A DNA stretch of 64,000 bases, from positions 62,001 through 126,000 of IMG/VR virus record IMGVR_UViG_3300042514_000542. One strand, written 5' to 3'. The position numbers were made by a program, and so were the translations under genes. Position 1 is the first letter of the stretch. Each line of letters opens with the position of its first letter. The notes under the pieces were generated by a model, which worked only from the letters and a program-made list of their open reading frames with translations, ran no database searches and was not told the DNA's origin. Shown here one piece after another: positions 19,417 through 28,259 of this stretch.

Positions 19417-21345
19417 TCAATCTTTCATCAACAAAATCTTACGAAGATCCTGTCTAGTAATAGTTGCGTTGTAGTTGCCAAGAGATTTAAGGATACGTCC
19501 ACGGGTAGAATTCTCCTTCATAATCTGTACCTTTACATCTTCAAGTTTTCCAAACTTAGAAGGATTTTTAGCAATATACTTTACAAGCCTATCCTTTGGT
19601 TTGGATGCATAGAAAAAGCCTTGAATGGAATATGTAGCATTATTAATGGCTCTTTGACGTTTATCCGCTTCATCAAATCTAGCCTTAGCGTCAGTATATT
19701 CTTGACTACTTGGAAGAATCCAACCAAGTTCCAAAAGGTTCTCAATCATCTTCTTACTATTAGCAGTCCAAAAATTATAGCGTGTTCCATAATCCTTGGT
19801 GGGTGCGATAGTTCTAGCATTGAGTTGATAAATGTTTTCCGTTTCAAGATGCCAATCATCTTCCAAATCAGCACCCTTGAAAGAATCCTTACGAACTTTT
19901 TCATCAAGTTCTTGAGCGGTGTAGTAATCCCTATTTCCATAGGAATTATACACAAGATATTGACCATTATCTAGATTGGTATTAACAAGCTTTGGAAGTT
20001 TAAGGCTCTTAATATCTACAAAAGCACAATCGGAAATATCAATACTGTCGTCCAAGTTCTTCAACAACTCAGCATGATCCTTATTAGAAATATATACATA
20101 TCCATCATAATCATCACCCTTAATAGATTTAAGGGCATTGATGAGACGTTTGTGCCAATTAGTGGTACTTTGAATGTCTGGAAAGATATAGATTATCTCC
20201 TTCGTGGCGGTAGAGTTAGCATAAACTTGTATAACGTGATCCCCAGCATTATCTCTACTACGTCCAACTTTATAATAATATTTATGAGTTGATGCGAAAC
20301 AATCCTTGTATGAATAAGAGAACCAATCACCATCATAATTACTACCATGCTGCTCGTTACCAGTTACCACAGCACCAAACTTTGGAGTAGTTAGGGCTGA
20401 TACTTCTTCTTGTGTAATTTTATCTAATGCATCTTCAATCTCCTTAAAGACTTTTTCATTAAGGGGCGTGTTCTCAATACTCTCACGGGAGATTGGTAGT
20501 GATAATTTACCAATAGGAACATCTACCACGACATACTTAAAGAATGAACGGTTGACTCTAGTGGATGTATTATATGGATAAATCACACCACCCATTCTCA
20601 CATAATATTTATTACTATAATAGTCTGGTTCATACTCATATTGATGGAAAGTATATTCACCTACCGTCTTTGATCGAATTGGACTATATGGCTCGGCTTG
20701 GGTTTTATTGTACTGATTATCGAATTTAATATTAGAATTCGGTAGAAAGAATGATACGAATTTGTTGGTTTTTTGGCTAAAGTCATATACATCTAAAGAC
20801 TTAACTTCAAGACTGATTTCAATACCTTGTTCCGTAGTAGGTTCTTGGGAGATTTCATAAATCTCACCAACAGGGATACCACCATTACCAGCACCTAGAG
20901 TGCAGATGTAACTAGTCTTGATACCATTATGATAAGAGGTGATGTAGAAAGTATCACTATAGGCATGTCCAGCTTTTGAACCCACACCGAATCCACCAAT
21001 GGAATCATTCTCATTGGTCTTAGTGGATTCGAAATACATACCGAAGACATTACGAACATCGTGATCATTAAGACCCTTTGCATAATCCCTTACAGCCCAA
21101 ACCCATTGATTATTCACAGACTTAAGAGAAACATTTACAGCTTCTTTAATCTTATGTTTAACGTGTTCGTCTTGAGCATTGCAGATGTATTCTCGAATAA
21201 CTGCAAGGGTTTTATCGGTATAGATACGATCCCGAAGGAAGTAGCTTGCCATTTCCATGCCCTTATTGGACATACCCATGATACTCTTGTTATCTTTGAT
21301 ATCGTCAGAGGCGATAGTCTTTGTTGTTAGTATTCCCGTTTTCAT
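19417..21345 (-). CDS. rIIA: rIIA-like protein (GHKL ATPase domain)
   Basis: IREYICNAQDEH, VRDYAKGL, STK..NDSIGGFGVGSKAGHAYSDTF. Confidence 0.9.
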   Translation of the reverse strand: MKTGILTTKTIASDDIKDNKSIMGMSNKGMEMASYFLRDRIYTDKTLAVIREYICNAQDEHVKHKIKEAVNVSLKSVNNQWVWAVRDYAKGLNDHDVRNVFGMYFESTKTNENDSIGGFGVGSKAGHAYSDTFYITSYHNGIKTSYICTLGAGNGGIPVGEIYEISQEPTTEQGIEISLEVKSLDVYDFSQKTNKFVSFFLPNSNIKFDNQYNKTQAEPYSPIRSKTVGEYTFHQYEYEPDYYSNKYYVRMGGVIYPYNTSTRVNRSFFKYVVVDVPIGKLSLPISRESIENTPLNEKVFKEIEDALDKITQEEVSALTTPKFGAVVTGNEQHGSNYDGDWFSYSYKDCFASTHKYYYKVGRSRDNAGDHVIQVYANSTATKEIIYIFPDIQSTTNWHKRLINALKSIKGDDYDGYVYISNKDHAELLKNLDDSIDISDCAFVDIKSLKLPKLVNTNLDNGQYLVYNSYGNRDYYTAQELDEKVRKDSFKGADLEDDWHLETENIYQLNARTIAPTKDYGTRYNFWTANSKKMIENLLELGWILPSSQEYTDAKARFDEADKRQRAINNATYSIQGFFYASKPKDRLVKYIAKNPSKFGKLEDVKVQIMKENSTRGRILKSLGNYNATITRQDLRKILLMKD

Positions 21346-22378: not shown

Positions 22379-23035
22379 TTATAGTTCGGTTTTAATTAGC
22401 TTGTTTGGAATTACTTCCGAATGCATCCAGTGTGTATCAGTCGTAACATGATTTGGTCTTACCCATTTCGCCACATTACTTCCAAAGTTTTCATATGCAA
22501 ATCCATCGGCATTGCGAACTACGTATCCTTCATGCACCTTACGATCCCTATTCATAAAGTCTTCAATATATACTGAAACATTACCGGGACTTCTTTCATC
22601 CCATAGAAAAGGCTTGGCTATAATAGGAACATGTTCAATACCCAACAACTGACAGAACTCTACAGTATCTTTCCAAGACAAGCAATAGTTAGTTTCATCC
22701 CAAATGGAGAAACAGTAGAAGTATGATTTAAGATCATCATAACCAATGGAATGTTTAGCGTAAAGATTCTCACCACACACTCTCCATCCTTCTGGAATGT
22801 CATTCTTAATAGATGCATGAAATTGTTTGATCCATGAACGTGATGGATGATCTTTACTATCCAATGAACGAGCATGATAATGATCATTATATAGAGTGGA
22901 ATTTTCACCATCCATCTTTTCGGTGATAATCATTGACTTACCATTGAAGCATGAAGTATCCTTAAGAATTTTATCATCAGAAGTCGCTCCCGGCGACCAG
23001 TTAAGGTGCTTTGTTCGTGGATACTTAATTTTCAT
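22379..23035 (-). CDS. RNA ligase (short Rnl2-like nucleotidyltransferase)
   Basis: YPRTKHL, TEKMDGEN, CGENLYAKHSI, EGYVV, AKWVR. Confidence 0.85.
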   Translation of the reverse strand: MKIKYPRTKHLNWSPGATSDDKILKDTSCFNGKSMIITEKMDGENSTLYNDHYHARSLDSKDHPSRSWIKQFHASIKNDIPEGWRVCGENLYAKHSIGYDDLKSYFYCFSIWDETNYCLSWKDTVEFCQLLGIEHVPIIAKPFLWDERSPGNVSVYIEDFMNRDRKVHEGYVVRNADGFAYENFGSNVAKWVRPNHVTTDTHWMHSEVIPNKLIKTEL

Positions 23036-23067
23036 ACCACTATTGTAGTTCGGTTTTAATTAAAGGG

Positions 23068-23320
23068 TTGATAGAATAGAAGTGCGTTGTTACACCAAAG
23101 GAGTTATGATCATCTAGCGACCTAGAGTCACATCCTATGAAACGCAATTCACGAGCATCGCAGCACCTTTGCAACAGTGTATGGTATCGTCAGCCATTTC
23201 TATTTTGCAAGGATGTATGTCTTAGTTGAATTGTATACATACGAATTACCTCTTCTCCACGTTTAGTTCCATTCATTATAAGGTGGCTACCTCTAAGCCT
23301 ACTTCCTTCTATTCTATCAA
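23068..23320 (-). ncRNA. candidate large structured RNA (253 nt)
   Basis: Perfect 15-bp closing stem TTGATAGAATAGAAG/CTTCTATTCTATCAA; internal stems GTATGT/ACATAC, ATCC/GGAT, GTGAC/GTCGC; no long ORF. Confidence 0.6.
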
Positions 23321-23323
23321 TGT

Positions 23324-23386
23324 GGAACCGTGTTGTAATGATCAACAGTAATAACCTAGCTGAGTTAGCATTGTTATTTCGGTTCC
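23324..23386 (-). ncRNA. candidate small three-way-junction RNA
   Basis: Closing stem GGAACCG/CGGTTCC followed by ACA; arms AATAAC/GTTATT and TGTTG/CAACA. Confidence 0.4.
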
Positions 23387-23393
23387 GATCCTA

Positions 23394-24176
23394 TTAAATT
23401 TTACACCATTTCCTGTCCATTTTAGGAACATCAATAGACAACAGTTTATTTCTCAAATAGATATACTTTCCAGTCTTTAAATTACCACCAAAAGATAGCT
23501 TATATACCATATTTGTATTTTTGATTTTTTTAATCGTGGTATCTATATTACAATAACTAGAAAACACGTTCTTTATAAATTGTAAAATATCACATGTCCC
23601 AATAATGGTAATAATTTGATTTCCATGGCTAGAAGCGATACAACCATCTCCATCTATATACCCTATTATATAGGCCAAAGCATGATTAACTGTTGGTATG
23701 TTTTCTGGCGGTTTAATCGTCGCCGTCTTATTCTGAGTAATGTTAAATCTATTAACTAATGTATTAACAATATCTGGAACCCCGGTGAATTCACATCCGA
23801 CATATTTTCCACCACCTCTAAAATAAAGTGGGCCATCATATTTAAAGTGTTCTTTTAACAGATTAACTGTCTTTAAATCTCTAGAGTGTAGCGTTAAACG
23901 AACCCTATTATTGGCTTCATCAATACATCCATCTGCTGCTAACAACCCAACCAAATACCAAGTCGTCAGATCATCATTATCGAAAGCCTTCTGATCTATA
24001 TTATATCTTGAGCCTTTACGTTTACCATTTCTTTTACTTTTACGCACACCAATATCTAAAATAGATCTACAAGATTTACATTGGGAAGTGTAAAGGTTTT
24101 TACTTTTTGATCTTTTATAAAAAGATTCTAATGGTTTAGTTTCTTTACAGGTTGTGCAGGTTTTGTTGTTAGTCAT
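23394..24176 (-). CDS. LAGLIDADG homing endonuclease with N-terminal Cys4 zinc finger
   Basis: CTTCKE..CKSC, WYLVGLLAADGCI, AYIIGYIDGDGCI; start reassigned to ATG 24176, after ACTAAATAATAGT. Confidence 0.85.
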   Translation of the reverse strand: MTNNKTCTTCKETKPLESFYKRSKSKNLYTSQCKSCRSILDIGVRKSKRNGKRKGSRYNIDQKAFDNDDLTTWYLVGLLAADGCIDEANNRVRLTLHSRDLKTVNLLKEHFKYDGPLYFRGGGKYVGCEFTGVPDIVNTLVNRFNITQNKTATIKPPENIPTVNHALAYIIGYIDGDGCIASSHGNQIITIIGTCDILQFIKNVFSSYCNIDTTIKKIKNTNMVYKLSFGGNLKTGKYIYLRNKLLSIDVPKMDRKWCKI

Positions 24177-24715
24177 ACTATTATTTAGTGTGATCAACAA
24201 CAAAACCCAAACTAACCACCTTAGAATGTAGTAATTTTAGAATTTCTCAATTCACAGGCAATGTCTCTTGTATCAACATTAACCCATACGCCCATAAATT
24301 GGTTTTTCCTAATGAACACCTGTTGTTGTCCACCAATCAAATGAAAACTCCCATCTGCGTTTCTAACTGCTGTTAAGTTAAAAACTTTAGGTGATTTTAA
24401 TTGATCCTTATTACGCATCCATCGTTTGTCTCTTTTTGTCTTTGTCATACTTATATGTTTTTATTTTTTATACCGGGACCATTGAGAAGAAAGTCTTCCA
24501 CTTCCATCATATTGATTTCATCATCAACCTCTTCCTTAAGTTTACCCAATTCCTTGAATAATTTATCGAGATTTTCGATGCTGTTTGTAGTAACATCGAA
24601 ATTACTAATATCTGATATCAACTTGTTGGTTTTTTGTTTCAACTGTTCTATTCTGCCACCCGATTCTTGTTCTTTGTTCACTGTCATAAAGAATCTATCA
24701 CACCAAAACGCTTTG

Positions 24716-27023: not shown

Positions 27024-28259
27024 TTATTTTACTTCTAATAGATATTTGATTCTGATTTGATTTCCATTATAGACAATCAATTCGTCATTTAGGAAAGATG
27101 TGTTTTGTGGCAATGCCCAGCAGGAATCATATCCAGATGGTAATTGACTGAAAGTATGTTTTGTATAGTAAGGATTACCCATCACGAAGTCACAGATAAA
27201 TAACCACCCACTATCACCCTTACCTTGACCCCATCTACCTAGAGTATACCCTAAACTTTTTGATGCTGTTTCAGATCCGTAAGTCCCGTTTCCAAAGGCT
27301 TTTCCGGCTATAGCGACAGTAGATGGTGGACTAGGTTGTAGACCACTTTTTAAAATACTGAGAATATTTGCGGAAGAACTTCCATGCCACACTTCCTTAA
27401 CATTCACCGGATTCTTCACAAAGTTAGCATTGTAATCCACAATGTCAACCTCATAAATGTTGATAATTTTAACATGTTGATAATGATGCATTGGTTTATT
27501 CGTGCTATTATACCAATCTTGAATTTTCTTAATAACCTTGGGATCAGTCACCAGAGACATATTGAGATTGAATACCTTTTCAGTAGAAGGTTTAGTGGCA
27601 TCAACAGGTGCTTTAAGTGCCATTTCAACACTGTTATCAAGAGCGTCCAATACATCAGATTCCTTCTTAACTACATCAACATTTGGAAAGATATTCTCAT
27701 ATAATAATCCACCACCCTTTGGTCTTGGGATGATCTTAAGATAATCATCAATTTTTTGATTGAAATCATCCTGACCATTCTTCTTAATGTTTTTGAAGAA
27801 GTAATCGAGTAGAATACGTGCCTCTGAGATACCCTCTTTGGTTACGATACCCAAGGGGGTTTGGAATACACCGTTATTGAAACTAATACTAGTTGAGTTG
27901 GTGATCTTATGGACATTGCTATCTGCAAGTCTCTTAACAAGAGTCTTAAGACTACTATCCGATAACTTAATTTGTGATAAGGCGATATCCGCCAATGACG
28001 TATTAGCAATAACCTTATTGGTTACAGCACCTTCCATTAGGACTTTAGCATGAGTATAACCCTTACGTTCCTTCTCACGGATTTTCTTATCAAAAAATGA
28101 CTTACCAACACATCCGAAATCCTTTGATTGTGGGTTCTTTGCCCCAACTACACCAAATTCCGCCATAACTCTTCCGTCGTCATGTAATTCGGCTTGCCAA
28201 AACTTATATGAGTTAGCTTTTAAGTCTGAGAAAACGAGCTTTACTTTTTCTTTTATCAT
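27024..28259 (-). CDS. WGR-domain PARP-like ADP-ribosyltransferase
   Basis: N-terminal WGR-like region (SYKFW..EFGVVG); catalytic WHGS..N..SIL..GL, G.AFG.G.YG, NDELIVY. Confidence 0.85.
   Translation of the reverse strand: MIKEKVKLVFSDLKANSYKFWQAELHDDGRVMAEFGVVGAKNPQSKDFGCVGKSFFDKKIREKERKGYTHAKVLMEGAVTNKVIANTSLADIALSQIKLSDSSLKTLVKRLADSNVHKITNSTSISFNNGVFQTPLGIVTKEGISEARILLDYFFKNIKKNGQDDFNQKIDDYLKIIPRPKGGGLLYENIFPNVDVVKKESDVLDALDNSVEMALKAPVDATKPSTEKVFNLNMSLVTDPKVIKKIQDWYNSTNKPMHHYQHVKIINIYEVDIVDYNANFVKNPVNVKEVWHGSSSANILSILKSGLQPSPPSTVAIAGKAFGNGTYGSETASKSLGYTLGRWGQGKGDSGWLFICDFVMGNPYYTKHTFSQLPSGYDSCWALPQNTSFLNDELIVYNGNQIRIKYLLEVK

What the first reader, a model, noticed from the sequence alone, without database searches (positions are those of the whole stretch)
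23068..23386. 253-nt multi-stem RNA closed by a perfect 15-bp helix, plus a 63-nt companion
It lies between a homing endonuclease and an RNA ligase in an otherwise tightly packed genome and has several internal stems. Short stretches loosely echo RNase P RNA (GAAGGAAGT after the first helix, GCAAAATAG, GCTAGATG), but the P4 consensus is not convincingly present. It may be an undescribed large phage ncRNA; a processing role for the array would be speculative.
Basis: partly seen in the sequence, partly recalled or inferred. Interest (0 to 1): 0.6.

Follow-up and report, generated by a model that had tools for sequence, protein, structure and literature searches.

The report
Phage RNA mimicking ribosomal GTPase centre
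The 253-nt folded RNA is real and belongs to a large, unannotated family of phage RNAs, usually found among tRNA genes, whose two ends rebuild the L11-binding 'GTPase-associated centre' of 23S ribosomal RNA around a variable inserted domain, so these phages appear to make a free-standing copy of a key ribosome site.

Summary
Window 23068-23320 (minus strand) is a 253-nt RNA closed by a perfect 15-bp helix, preceded by a 63-nt Y-shaped hairpin. It lies between a LAGLIDADG homing endonuclease gene and an intact RNA ligase gene. It is not RNase P, a group I intron, GOLLD/ROOL or any Rfam family.

Eighteen homologues (72-90% identical) from lake phage contigs keep every helix. Each has a different closing-helix sequence, and all sit co-oriented inside tRNA arrays.

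The key result is that the ends of the RNA copy the 23S rRNA GTPase-associated centre (GAC; H42-H43-H44, E. coli nt ~1051-1108):
- the H43 loop carrying A1067
- the 1082:1086 turn
- the H44 hexaloop carrying A1095
- the 6-nt and 3-nt junctions
- the 1072·(1092-1099) base triple, which covaries as C/(C-G) or U/(U-A)

A 171-nt lineage-specific domain is inserted in H44. The same design occurs in at least 108 distinct IMG/VR phage RNAs and, unannotated, in cultured phages such as Pseudomonas phage pf16.

Most likely it folds like the GAC and binds host uL11 or other GAC ligands off the ribosome. Binding and biological role are inferred, not shown, and no expression data were available. I found no prior description.

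The parts
23306..23320 (-). P1 5' arm (15 nt). This closing helix is the counterpart of 23S rRNA H42.
   Evidence: Perfect 15-bp inverted repeat. P1 sequence differs in every lineage but always pairs, with 68 distinct arms in 73 family members.
23300..23305 (-). 6-nt junction GAAGUA, counterpart of 23S nt 1056-1061 (GAUGUU). Its third base pairs with nt 1080. A at position 1061 is the known stabilising variant.
   Evidence: The 1058:1080 pair is Watson-Crick in 72/72 members with all four pair types. U1061A is described in PMC1802607.
23285..23299 (-). H43 mimic GGCUUAGAGGUAGCC (23S nt 1062-1076), with the loop carrying the A1067 equivalent.
   Evidence: blastn and nhmmer against E. coli 23S. 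Stem covariation C-G to A-U in L109 and L113. The string occurs in the L11-binding RNA of PMC1802607.
23271..23284 (-). ACCUU + AUAAUGAAU, counterpart of 23S nt 1077-1090. This covers the H43 3' strand, the 1082:1086 turn (A:U here) and the start of H44.
   Evidence: The 1082:1086 pair covaries as U:A 44, C:G 15, A:U 6.
23100..23270 (-). Inserted lineage-specific domain (171 nt). Its parts are: closing helix GGA/UCC; long-range helix 23243-23253 with 23140-23150; hairpin 23237-23242 with 23215-23220; optional hairpin 23166-23212; hairpin 23151-23161; optional hairpin 23113-23127.
   Evidence: 85% identical in relatives. Covariation in four helices. In the 193-nt variants the two optional hairpins are replaced by GNRA-capped stubs. 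No similarity to 23S rRNA.
23096..23099 (-). UUUG linker, conserved across the whole family between the inserted domain and H44.
23086..23095 (-). H44 mimic GUGUAACAAC (23S nt 1091-1100), with the hexaloop carrying the A1095 equivalent. The U-A pair at 1092-1099 matches U at 1072.
   Evidence: Triple covariation is C/(C-G) in 60 members, U/(U-A) in 12, with 1 exception. The tertiary contacts are listed in PMC2952862.
23083..23085 (-). 3-nt junction GCA, counterpart of 23S nt 1101-1103 (UCA).
   Evidence: The junction is NCA in 70/73 members.
23068..23082 (-). P1 3' arm.
23324..23386 (-). 63-nt companion, a Y-shaped hairpin. A 7-bp stem is stacked on a 5-bp stem with a 7-nt loop, giving tRNA-minihelix-like geometry. 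It is a possible processing handle left from a tRNA.
   Evidence: Fold z = -4.0. Not a tRNA by ARAGORN or Rfam. No homologues. The processing role is inferred from relatives that start 0-10 nt after a tRNA.
23040..23063 (-). Promoter-like 24-mer of the RNA ligase gene. It marks the downstream limit of the RNA's transcription unit.
   Evidence: 57 copies in the genome, with an ATG 4 nt after the motif in 40 of them.
23394..24178 (-). LAGLIDADG / zinc-finger homing endonuclease gene, directly upstream of the companion and the RNA.
   Evidence: The endonuclease and the RNA are both absent from the closest complete relative.

Best explanation
The element is a stand-alone phage RNA that rebuilds the GTPase-associated centre (GAC) of 23S rRNA.

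Shown:
- Its closing helix corresponds to H42. Its 5' part copies nt 1056-1090, that is H43 with the A1067 loop and the 1082:1086 turn. Its 3' part copies nt 1091-1103, that is the H44 hexaloop with A1095.
- The junction lengths match rRNA, and the pairs and the base triple that hold the rRNA domain together covary here as well.
- A 171-nt domain plus a UUUG linker is inserted between nt 1090 and 1091.
- It belongs to a family of more than 100 phage RNAs of 105-416 nt that differ mainly in that inserted domain. These are normally embedded, co-oriented, in tRNA arrays.

Inferred:
- The RNA is cut out of a longer transcript by tRNA-processing enzymes. In this phage the RNA sits outside the array, behind a homing endonuclease gene, and the 63-nt tRNA-like hairpin upstream supplies the cut site.
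- The isolated 58-nt rRNA domain folds on its own and binds the C-terminal domain of uL11, so the phage RNA most likely binds host uL11. The phage encodes no L10, L11 or L12.
- It would thereby present a GAC off the ribosome, acting as a decoy or platform for GAC ligands during infection. Candidates are uL11 itself, translational GTPases, RelA with deacylated tRNA, thiopeptides, or toxins aimed at the GAC.
- The inserted domain would give lineage-specific function.
For: - Homologues and covariation of the window subfamily.
- Similarity to E. coli 23S nt 1054-1089 by blastn and to 1057-1089 by nhmmer (E 1.8e-6, the only hit in 23S).
- Rfam's LSU model gives a sub-threshold local hit on the pf16 member, covering model positions 1180-1233, which is the same region.
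- A 24-nt degenerate pattern of the 5' module, expected about once by chance, hits more than 118 IMG/VR contigs.
- 73 of 108 unique members also carry the H44 motif, which was not used for retrieval. It sits exactly 3 nt before a strand that pairs with the sequence ending 6 nt before H43.
- Covariation is 1072/(1092-1099) 60+12 against 1 exception, 1058:1080 in 72/72 members, and 1082:1086 in 65/72.
- The helix closing the inserted domain covaries across the family.
- The uL11 C-terminal-domain contact nucleotides (1058-1060, 1062-1065, 1075-1083, 1088) and the autonomous fold of the 58-60-nt RNA are described in PMC1802607. The tertiary contacts are in PMC2952862.
- tRNA context: 38/38 nearest upstream tRNAs are co-oriented and 12 lie within 10 nt; 19/44 downstream tRNAs lie within 10 nt.
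- The own genome has a single copy and no L10, L11 or L12 gene.
Against: - There is no expression or end-mapping data. All 22 public runs that hold the DNA are DNA runs.
- No binding test was possible with these tools.
- The insertion sits inside H44, and the conserved UUUG could change the junction, so uL11 binding is not guaranteed.
- The window copy is one of the more diverged members: GAGG instead of GAAG in the H43 loop, C at 1078, and A:U at 1082:1086.
- P1 has no kink-turn, so uL10 binding is doubtful.
- Retrieval by the 5' pattern biases what looks conserved in H43.
- Within the window subfamily the pairing partner of UCC (GGA or AGGA) is unresolved.
- The biological benefit to the phage is unknown.
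Confidence: 0.6

Rival explanations
1. The GAC module is only a handle. It recruits an abundant host protein (uL11) to stabilise and fold the RNA. The working part is the inserted domain, for example a ribozyme, an aptamer, or a regulator of tRNA metabolism or translation.
For: The inserted domain is the most strongly conserved part within the window subfamily, with about 85% identity and long invariant runs. It has GNRA-capped optional hairpins, as large folded RNAs do. Inserted domains differ completely between subfamilies while the GAC frame stays the same. Members reside in tRNA arrays.
Against: No known ribozyme or aptamer family matches any inserted domain. A plain hairpin would be a cheaper handle. 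The faithful retention of both thiostrepton-site loops (A1067, A1095) suggests that the factor-binding face itself is under selection.
Confidence: 0.2
2. It is an anti-defence or anti-antibiotic decoy. The free GAC copy would soak up a host or competitor factor that attacks or blocks the ribosomal GAC, such as a nuclease, a modifying enzyme or a thiopeptide-like compound.
For: The family is phage-restricted as far as seen here and widespread. It sits next to other counter-defence-type cargo such as tRNAs, tmRNA and an RNA ligase. Its bases are exact copies of the thiostrepton-site loops.
Against: I know of no defence system that targets H43/H44, and none turned up in the literature searches. 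A decoy must compete with thousands of ribosomes.
Confidence: 0.12
3. It is a dead fragment of a 23S rRNA gene, or of an rRNA intervening sequence, picked up by phages.
For: It shows sequence identity to 23S nt 1054-1089. The insertion is flanked by 'exon-like' rRNA pieces.
Against: The closing helix is not the rRNA H42 sequence and differs in 68 of 73 members while always pairing. Compensatory changes maintain the pairs and the triple. Only about 50 nt of rRNA are represented, always the same two pieces with the same spacing. No LSU rRNA gene is present in 20 loci.
Confidence: 0.02
4. It is an RNase P-like or other tRNA-processing ribozyme.
For: Relatives lie in tRNA arrays. On the ribosome the GAC touches the tRNA elbow (own knowledge), so a tRNA-binding role is conceivable.
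Against: No RNase P model matches at E<=10. The CR-I-like string is not conserved. There is no P4 pseudoknot topology. One relative's array (L123) carries a genuine class-A RNase P RNA that Rfam finds easily, as a gene separate from its GAC-like RNA.
Confidence: 0.03
5. It is a group I intron or other remnant belonging to the homing endonuclease, a cis-regulatory leader of the RNA ligase gene, or a DNA-level inverted repeat.
For: It is adjacent to a LAGLIDADG gene. At first sight the ligase matched only the C-terminal two thirds of one PHROG profile.
Against: The ligase is full length in 158 relatives of about 215 aa and has its own promoter motif after the RNA. Endonuclease relatives are not followed by the RNA. 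Homologues of the RNA lie in arrays without endonuclease or ligase genes. G·U pairs in P1 (L103, L113) fit RNA pairing, not DNA pairing. There is no group I hit.
Confidence: 0.02

Closest known systems
23S rRNA GTPase-associated centre: the 58-nt L11-binding / thiostrepton domain (H42-H43-H44, E. coli nt 1051-1108)
   Same: The H43 sequence and loop, the 1058:1080 and 1082:1086 pairs, the H44 hexaloop, the 1072·(1092-1099) triple, and the 6-nt and 3-nt junctions all match. The closing helix stands in place of H42.
   Different: It is a separate small gene in a phage, not part of an rRNA. A domain of 74-318 nt plus UUUG is inserted between nt 1090 and 1091. The P1 sequence is free and has no kink-turn. 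The window copy has several base changes in the junction.
Ribosomal-protein autoregulatory mRNA leaders that mimic rRNA binding sites (e.g. the L10 leader, Rfam RF00557)
   Same: They share the principle that an RNA outside the ribosome copies an rRNA protein-binding site.
   Different: Those leaders are cis-acting, lie upstream of the r-protein operon they control, and copy only part of a site. This RNA is not next to any r-protein gene, sits in tRNA arrays of phages, and copies the tertiary fold in detail. No leader family matched.
Phage T4 stable RNAs species 1 and 2 (rnaC, rnaD)
   Same: They are stable-RNA genes of unknown function at the end of a phage tRNA cluster, next to a homing endonuclease gene. 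The T4 layout is segB, tRNA-Arg, rnaD, rnaC. The layout here is endonuclease, tRNA-like hairpin, RNA.
   Different: There is no sequence or structure similarity to model R1. The T4 RNAs are 119 and 139 nt with tRNA-like 3' ends and have no GAC module.
GOLLD and ROOL large phage-associated RNAs
   Same: They are large ornate RNAs of phages, often beside tRNA genes, and some come from lake metagenomes.
   Different: They are much larger (about 600-800 nt). Their Rfam models do not match. One relative's contig has a GOLLD RNA as a separate gene.
Bacterial RNase P RNA
   Same: Both have a closing helix formed by the two ends, are multi-stem, and are linked to tRNA genes.
   Different: See the membership test. 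There is no model match, no conserved CR-I/CR-V, and no P4 pseudoknot.

Membership tests
23S rRNA GAC fold (H42-H44 L11-binding domain), as a structural mimic | H43 hairpin with the loop UUAGAAGCA carrying A1067 | tested here: met
   The window has GGCUUAGAGGUAGCC, with 13 of 15 bases identical to nt 1062-1076. Relatives have 14-15 of 15.
23S rRNA GAC fold (H42-H44 L11-binding domain), as a structural mimic | H44 hairpin with a GUAAUA-type hexaloop (A1095), closed by the 1091-1100 and 1092-1099 pairs | tested here: met
   The window has GUGUAACAAC at 23086-23095. The motif is found at the exact position in 73 of 108 members, although it was not used for retrieval.
23S rRNA GAC fold (H42-H44 L11-binding domain), as a structural mimic | Tertiary base triple 1072·(1092-1099) | tested here: met
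   C/(C-G) in 60 members, U/(U-A) in 12 (including the window), 1 exception. The contact is described in PMC2952862. This is supported by covariation only; no 3D test was made.
23S rRNA GAC fold (H42-H44 L11-binding domain), as a structural mimic | The 1058:1080 and 1082:1086 pairs and the rRNA junction lengths (6 nt and 3 nt) | tested here: met
   1058:1080 is Watson-Crick in 72/72 members and 1082:1086 in 65/72. The geometry is exact in 73 members, and the 3' junction is NCA in 70 of the 73.
23S rRNA GAC fold (H42-H44 L11-binding domain), as a structural mimic | Binds uL11 C-terminal domain or thiostrepton; Mg2+/K+-dependent tertiary folding | not testable with these tools
   The tools offer no RNA-protein prediction or assay. 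Binding is inferred from conservation of the contact nucleotides listed in PMC1802607.
23S rRNA gene | Continuous LSU rRNA sequence around the GAC | tested here: not met
   Only nt ~1054-1089 and 1091-1103 are represented. nhmmer finds no other 23S similarity. There is no LSU hit at gathering score.
RNase P RNA (Rfam RF00010, RF00011, RF00373, RF02357) | Match to a covariance model; conserved CR-I/CR-V forming the P4 pseudoknot | tested here: not met
   There is no hit at E<=10 in the window or in five homologues. GGAAGU is not conserved. The consensus structure has no P2/P4 pseudoknot.
Group I intron | Interrupts a gene; P3-P9 core; Rfam RF00028 match | tested here: not met
   The ligase is complete. 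There is no hit. Homologues lie between tRNA genes.
Ribosomal-protein leader (rRNA mimic in cis) | Lies in the 5' UTR of the r-protein operon it regulates | tested here: not met
   The neighbours are an endonuclease and an RNA ligase, or tRNAs. The phage has no L10, L11 or L12 gene.
T4 rnaC/rnaD stable RNAs | Sequence or structure homology to T4 species 1 or 2 RNA | tested here: not met
   With filters off, model R1 gives only noise on the T4 tRNA region and nothing at rnaC or rnaD.
tRNA (for the 63-nt companion) | Cloverleaf recognised by ARAGORN or Rfam RF00005 | tested here: not met
   There is no call at default settings, only forced low-threshold calls in other registers.

The most novel reading that the evidence does not exclude
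Phages from many lineages make a free-standing GTPase-associated centre. The RNA would assemble with host uL11, and perhaps stalk proteins, into an off-ribosome particle. That particle would capture translational GTPases or RelA with deacylated tRNA through the GAC face, while the variable inserted domain directs the particle to a lineage-specific target. This would be a new way for viruses to reprogram translation, blunt the stringent response, or evade ribosome-directed defence.
Probability: 0.25. Interest if true: 0.95.

Novelty: categorically new. Interest (0 to 1): 0.88.

Why it matters
The GAC is one of the most conserved functional sites of the ribosome. It is the docking site of EF-G, EF-Tu ternary complexes, IF2, RF3 and RelA, and the target of thiopeptide antibiotics. 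To my knowledge and in the literature I could search, a trans-acting RNA gene that copies its tertiary fold has not been described. It is also absent from Rfam 15.

It spans T4-like and jumbo phages of Pseudomonas, Aeromonas, Xanthomonas, Erwinia, Serratia and Cronobacter, as well as uncultured lake phages. It lies in unannotated gaps of published genomes, so the question can be tested directly in culturable systems such as pf16 on Pseudomonas putida. It also explains part of the unexplained spacers in phage tRNA arrays, and it offers a natural scaffold that displays the thiostrepton/uL11 site on a small RNA.

Tried and rejected
- **GenBank phages.** megablast and blastn of the region found nothing.
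- **Split-ligase idea.** I considered a ligase split by an intron. I rejected it because 158 relatives encode the same ~215-aa protein and the gene has its own promoter motif.
- **Conservation next to the ligase.** Eighty relatives were checked. None carries the RNA, and the closest complete genome lacks both the endonuclease and the RNA.
- **Conservation next to the endonuclease.** A word search in IMG/VR found nothing. Relatives at 52% and 42% identity are not followed by the RNA.
- **Coding potential.** tblastx found nothing, and the indels of 35 and 38 nt are not multiples of three.
- **Expression.** No RNA run holds the locus. Laying DNA contigs (5,001 letters) only showed strain variants, including the 35-nt hairpin deletion.
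- **Wasted scan.** One viral scan was the reverse complement of an earlier pattern.
- **Covariance models.** The 187-position model R1 found only one distant relative in 49 ligase-bearing phage genomes.
- **T4 rnaC/rnaD.** No similarity.
- **Bacterial genomes.** The subfamily 20-mer gave only chance 20-nt matches in two Acidobacteriota MAGs and in one metagenome contig.
- **Other rRNA similarity.** The inserted domain shows no further rRNA similarity.
- **Companion as a tRNA.** Rejected.
Full report
**Setting**

The window is nt 62001-126000 of a complete 206.6-kb IMG/VR virus record from lake water. Around the finding all genes are on the minus strand:
- rIIA (19417-21345)
- two small genes
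- a 218-aa RNA ligase (22379-23035; full Pfam RNA_ligase domain)
- the 358-nt gap 23036-23393
- a LAGLIDADG endonuclease with an N-terminal zinc finger (23394-24203, probable ATG at 24178)

**The observation**

The repeat finder reports arms 23068-23082 and 23306-23320 as a perfect 15-bp inverted repeat 223 nt apart. It is the only such long-range perfect repeat in the 64 kb.

The gap folds better on the gene strand (z = -3.06) than on the other strand (z = -1.99). The 63-nt companion (23324-23386) folds into a Y shape at -18 kcal/mol, z = -4.0.

Rfam finds nothing in the window at gathering score. At E<=10 the gap gives only two chance-level hits, to a microRNA and a snoRNA model. ARAGORN finds no tRNA.

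**Finding relatives**

Context-based searches failed:
- The ligase has 158 relatives in IMG/VR, all about 215 aa. None has the RNA upstream.
- The closest complete genome (78% ligase identity) has neither the endonuclease nor the RNA.
- Relatives of the endonuclease are not followed by the RNA.
- An independent 1.7-kb contig is identical.

Laying DNA contigs of four lake metagenomes (5,001 letters) showed diverged copies of the middle of the RNA in one run, including a 35-nt skip. That pointed to a conserved 19-mer, which hit six IMG/VR contigs. A 20-mer from another block then hit twelve JGI/ENA metagenome contigs plus one chance match.

blastn shows 72-90% identity over the interior of the element and none over the closing helix.

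**Structure of the subfamily**

The closing helix is present in every copy but with unrelated sequences. There are at least five versions. They include single compensatory steps (CAGGU/ACCUG, CGGGU/ACCCG, UAGGU/ACCUA) and G·U pairs.

RNAalifold and a model-based alignment give eight internal helices. On 16 distinct sequences:
- 99.5% of cells pair, against 94.5% in shuffles (0/500 reach the observed value)
- pairing falls to 52% or less when partners are slid
- seven pairs show changes on both sides

Two peripheral hairpins are optional. In the 193-nt and 209-nt variants they are replaced by stubs capped with GCAA or GAAA tetraloops. The 35-nt skip seen in the reads is one of these.

The indels are not multiples of three and tblastx finds nothing, so the element is not coding.

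All homologues lie co-oriented inside phage tRNA arrays. Several start 2-4 nt after a tRNA, and three arrays also carry a tmRNA. Five of the homologous loci searched at E<=10 match no Rfam family at the element.

**What it is**

A covariance model of the core (R1) found one distant hit among 49 phage genomes. That hit is again in a tRNA array, closed by its own helix, and shares only the first 35 nt.

I turned that shared module into a degenerate 24-nt pattern, expected about once by chance. [quoted passage not shown] The module is nt ~1056-1090 of 23S rRNA.

Three direct comparisons confirm this:
- blastn aligns the window RNA to E. coli 23S nt 1054-1089 and the other members to nt ~1046-1107.
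- An HMM of the subfamily hits 23S only at 1057-1089, E 1.8e-6.
- Rfam's LSU model gives a sub-threshold local hit to the same region on the pf16 member.

The 3' end of the element, GUGUAACAAC + GCA, corresponds to nt 1091-1103. This is the H44 hexaloop with A1095, followed by the junction. The closing helix stands where H42 does.

**Family-wide test**

There are 108 unique members. In 73 of them an H44-type motif lies exactly 3 nt before a strand that pairs with the sequence ending exactly 6 nt before H43. That is the rRNA geometry. The H44 motif was not part of the retrieval pattern.

| Feature | Result |
|---|---|
| P1 length | 4-15 bp, 68 distinct sequences |
| RNA size | 105-416 nt, median 201 |
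| 3' junction | NCA in 70/73 |
| Pair 1058:1080 | Watson-Crick in 72/72, all four types |
| Pair 1082:1086 | U:A 44, C:G 15, A:U 6, other 7 |
| Triple 1072/(1092-1099) | C/(C-G) 60, U/(U-A) 12, exception 1 |

These are the contacts that hold H43 against H44 in the ribosome (PMC2952862). The window copy has the U/(U-A) triple, A:U at 1082:1086, and A at 1061, the substitution used to stabilise the isolated rRNA domain (PMC1802607).

Between GAGU (1087-1090) and a conserved UUUG lies the variable domain. It is closed by a helix whose sequence covaries freely across the family. In the window subfamily this closing helix would be GG(A/G) with (U/C)CC. It competes with the AGGA/UCCU pairing that RNAalifold prefers, and I could not resolve which forms.

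**Context and distribution**

Where a tRNA is within the fetched locus:
- the nearest upstream tRNA is always co-oriented (38/38) and lies within 10 nt in 12 cases
- the nearest downstream tRNA lies within 10 nt in 19 of 44 cases

Twenty family loci scanned with Rfam show only tRNAs. There is no annotation at the element and no LSU rRNA gene. One locus also has a class-A RNase P RNA and one a GOLLD RNA, each as a separate gene.

Cultured phages carry unannotated members. Pseudomonas phage pf16 has a canonical 193-nt copy in the gap between tRNA-Asn and tRNA-Pro. Aeromonas 4_4572 and Pseudomonas Astolliot and UNO-G1W1 match at both ends of the query. Pseudomonas Milchi, Xanthomonas XacN1, Cronobacter GAP32, Serratia BF and several Erwinia jumbo phages match through the H43 module.

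The window genome has exactly one copy. Its 23 tRNA genes lie elsewhere in the genome, at 21-32 kb and 55-56 kb.

**How it probably works**

What is shown is that the RNA is a faithful structural copy of the GAC with an inserted domain, and that it is a member of a large phage family linked to tRNA arrays.

What is inferred falls into three steps.

(a) Biogenesis. In arrays the RNA abuts tRNAs, so RNase P, RNase Z and related enzymes would free it. In this phage it lies at the end of a ~3.2-kb unit that starts at the promoter-like motif at window 26262 and ends before the next motif at 23040-23063. The 63-nt hairpin is a 7-bp stem stacked on a 5-bp stem with a 7-nt loop. This is the geometry of a tRNA acceptor/T minihelix, and it sits just where a tRNA sits in relatives. 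It may be a degenerate tRNA kept as a processing handle. It has no homologues, so this could not be tested.

(b) Binding. The 58-60-nt rRNA domain folds autonomously and binds the uL11 C-terminal domain through nt 1058-1060, 1062-1065, 1075-1083 and 1088 (PMC1802607). All of these lie in the conserved 5' module. The phage encodes no L10, L11 or L12, so any partner must come from the host.

(c) Role. The RNA would be an off-ribosome GAC that titrates or recruits GAC ligands. I cannot choose between a uL11 sponge, a trap for translational GTPases or RelA, a decoy for a GAC-directed toxin or thiopeptide, and a protein-binding handle for the inserted domain. The presence of a MazG-family gene in the phage's tRNA array is at most a hint of interest in the stringent response.

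**Comparison with known systems**

- It works like, and structurally is, a mimic of the 23S GAC, but it is not an rRNA gene.
- It shares the mimicry principle with r-protein leaders but fails their defining feature, cis location in an r-protein operon.
- It shares the genomic layout of T4 rnaC/rnaD (segB, tRNA-Arg, rnaD, rnaC) but has no homology to them.
- It is not RNase P, a group I intron, GOLLD or ROOL.
- Literature searches for a phage GAC or L11 mimic found nothing. The library lacks most subscription journals, so prior description cannot be excluded.

**Limits**

- There are no expression data.
- Binding is untested.
- The structure of the inserted domain rests on 16 fairly similar sequences.
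- E-values of model R1 are rough.

Noticed in passing
window 23040-23063, and 56 further copies in the genome (e.g. window 26262, 22399, 21485): A 24-nt motif, TTAATTAAAACCGAA-N-TAYAAT, occurs 57 times. Fifty-one copies are on the gene strand of the early region and 6 lie in front of the tRNA array. In 40 of the 57 an ATG starts exactly 4 nt after the motif, which is 7 nt after the -10-like box. This looks like a phage-specific extended promoter producing leaderless mRNAs.
   Followed up: partly
window 24159-24207: A 22-bp hairpin (z = -5.9) buries the endonuclease start codon (24176-24178). This resembles the translational sequestration known for T4 homing endonuclease genes.
   Followed up: partly
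window 23068-24203, compared with L009 1699-3000: The endonuclease gene, the companion and the RNA are all missing from the closest complete relative (78% ligase identity). That relative has two unrelated small ORFs at this position, so the three look like one acquired cassette.
   Followed up: partly
L123 9376-9703 (IMGVR_UViG_3300027313_000002); L142 685-1176; L102, L105, L107: Phage tRNA arrays that hold GAC-like RNAs also hold a bona fide class-A RNase P RNA (263.7 bits), a GOLLD RNA, and tmRNAs.
   Followed up: no
own genome G000:C1 23941-24013 and 22038-22244 (outside the window): ARAGORN calls a tRNA with anticodon CUA (amber-reading) in the phage's tRNA array. A MazG-family pyrophosphohydrolase gene lies inside the same array.
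   Followed up: no
L104 1011-1090, and the same place in L109, L110, L113, L114, L115, L119; L102 13229-13280: One branch of the subfamily has an extra conserved, apparently structured module just upstream of P1 (GCCAGUCCUG ... CUAUGGAC). The transcript may be longer there.
   Followed up: no
window 23168-23202, and variants at 23225, 23237, 23257, 23261, 23263: Contigs from one lake metagenome (run X4) show diverged copies of the RNA, including one without the 35-nt hairpin tip. Long and short forms therefore co-occur in nature.
   Followed up: partly
L103 2455-2540 (minus strand): The element directly follows what reads as a class-II tRNA-Tyr(GUA) gene with an encoded CCA. ARAGORN did not call it. 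A weak YrlA-like Rfam hit (23 bits) lies nearby in L108.
   Followed up: no
window 27024-28259 (L093 1-153): A 411-aa protein with a PARP-type ADP-ribosyltransferase domain is encoded about 4 kb upstream in the same gene block.
   Followed up: no
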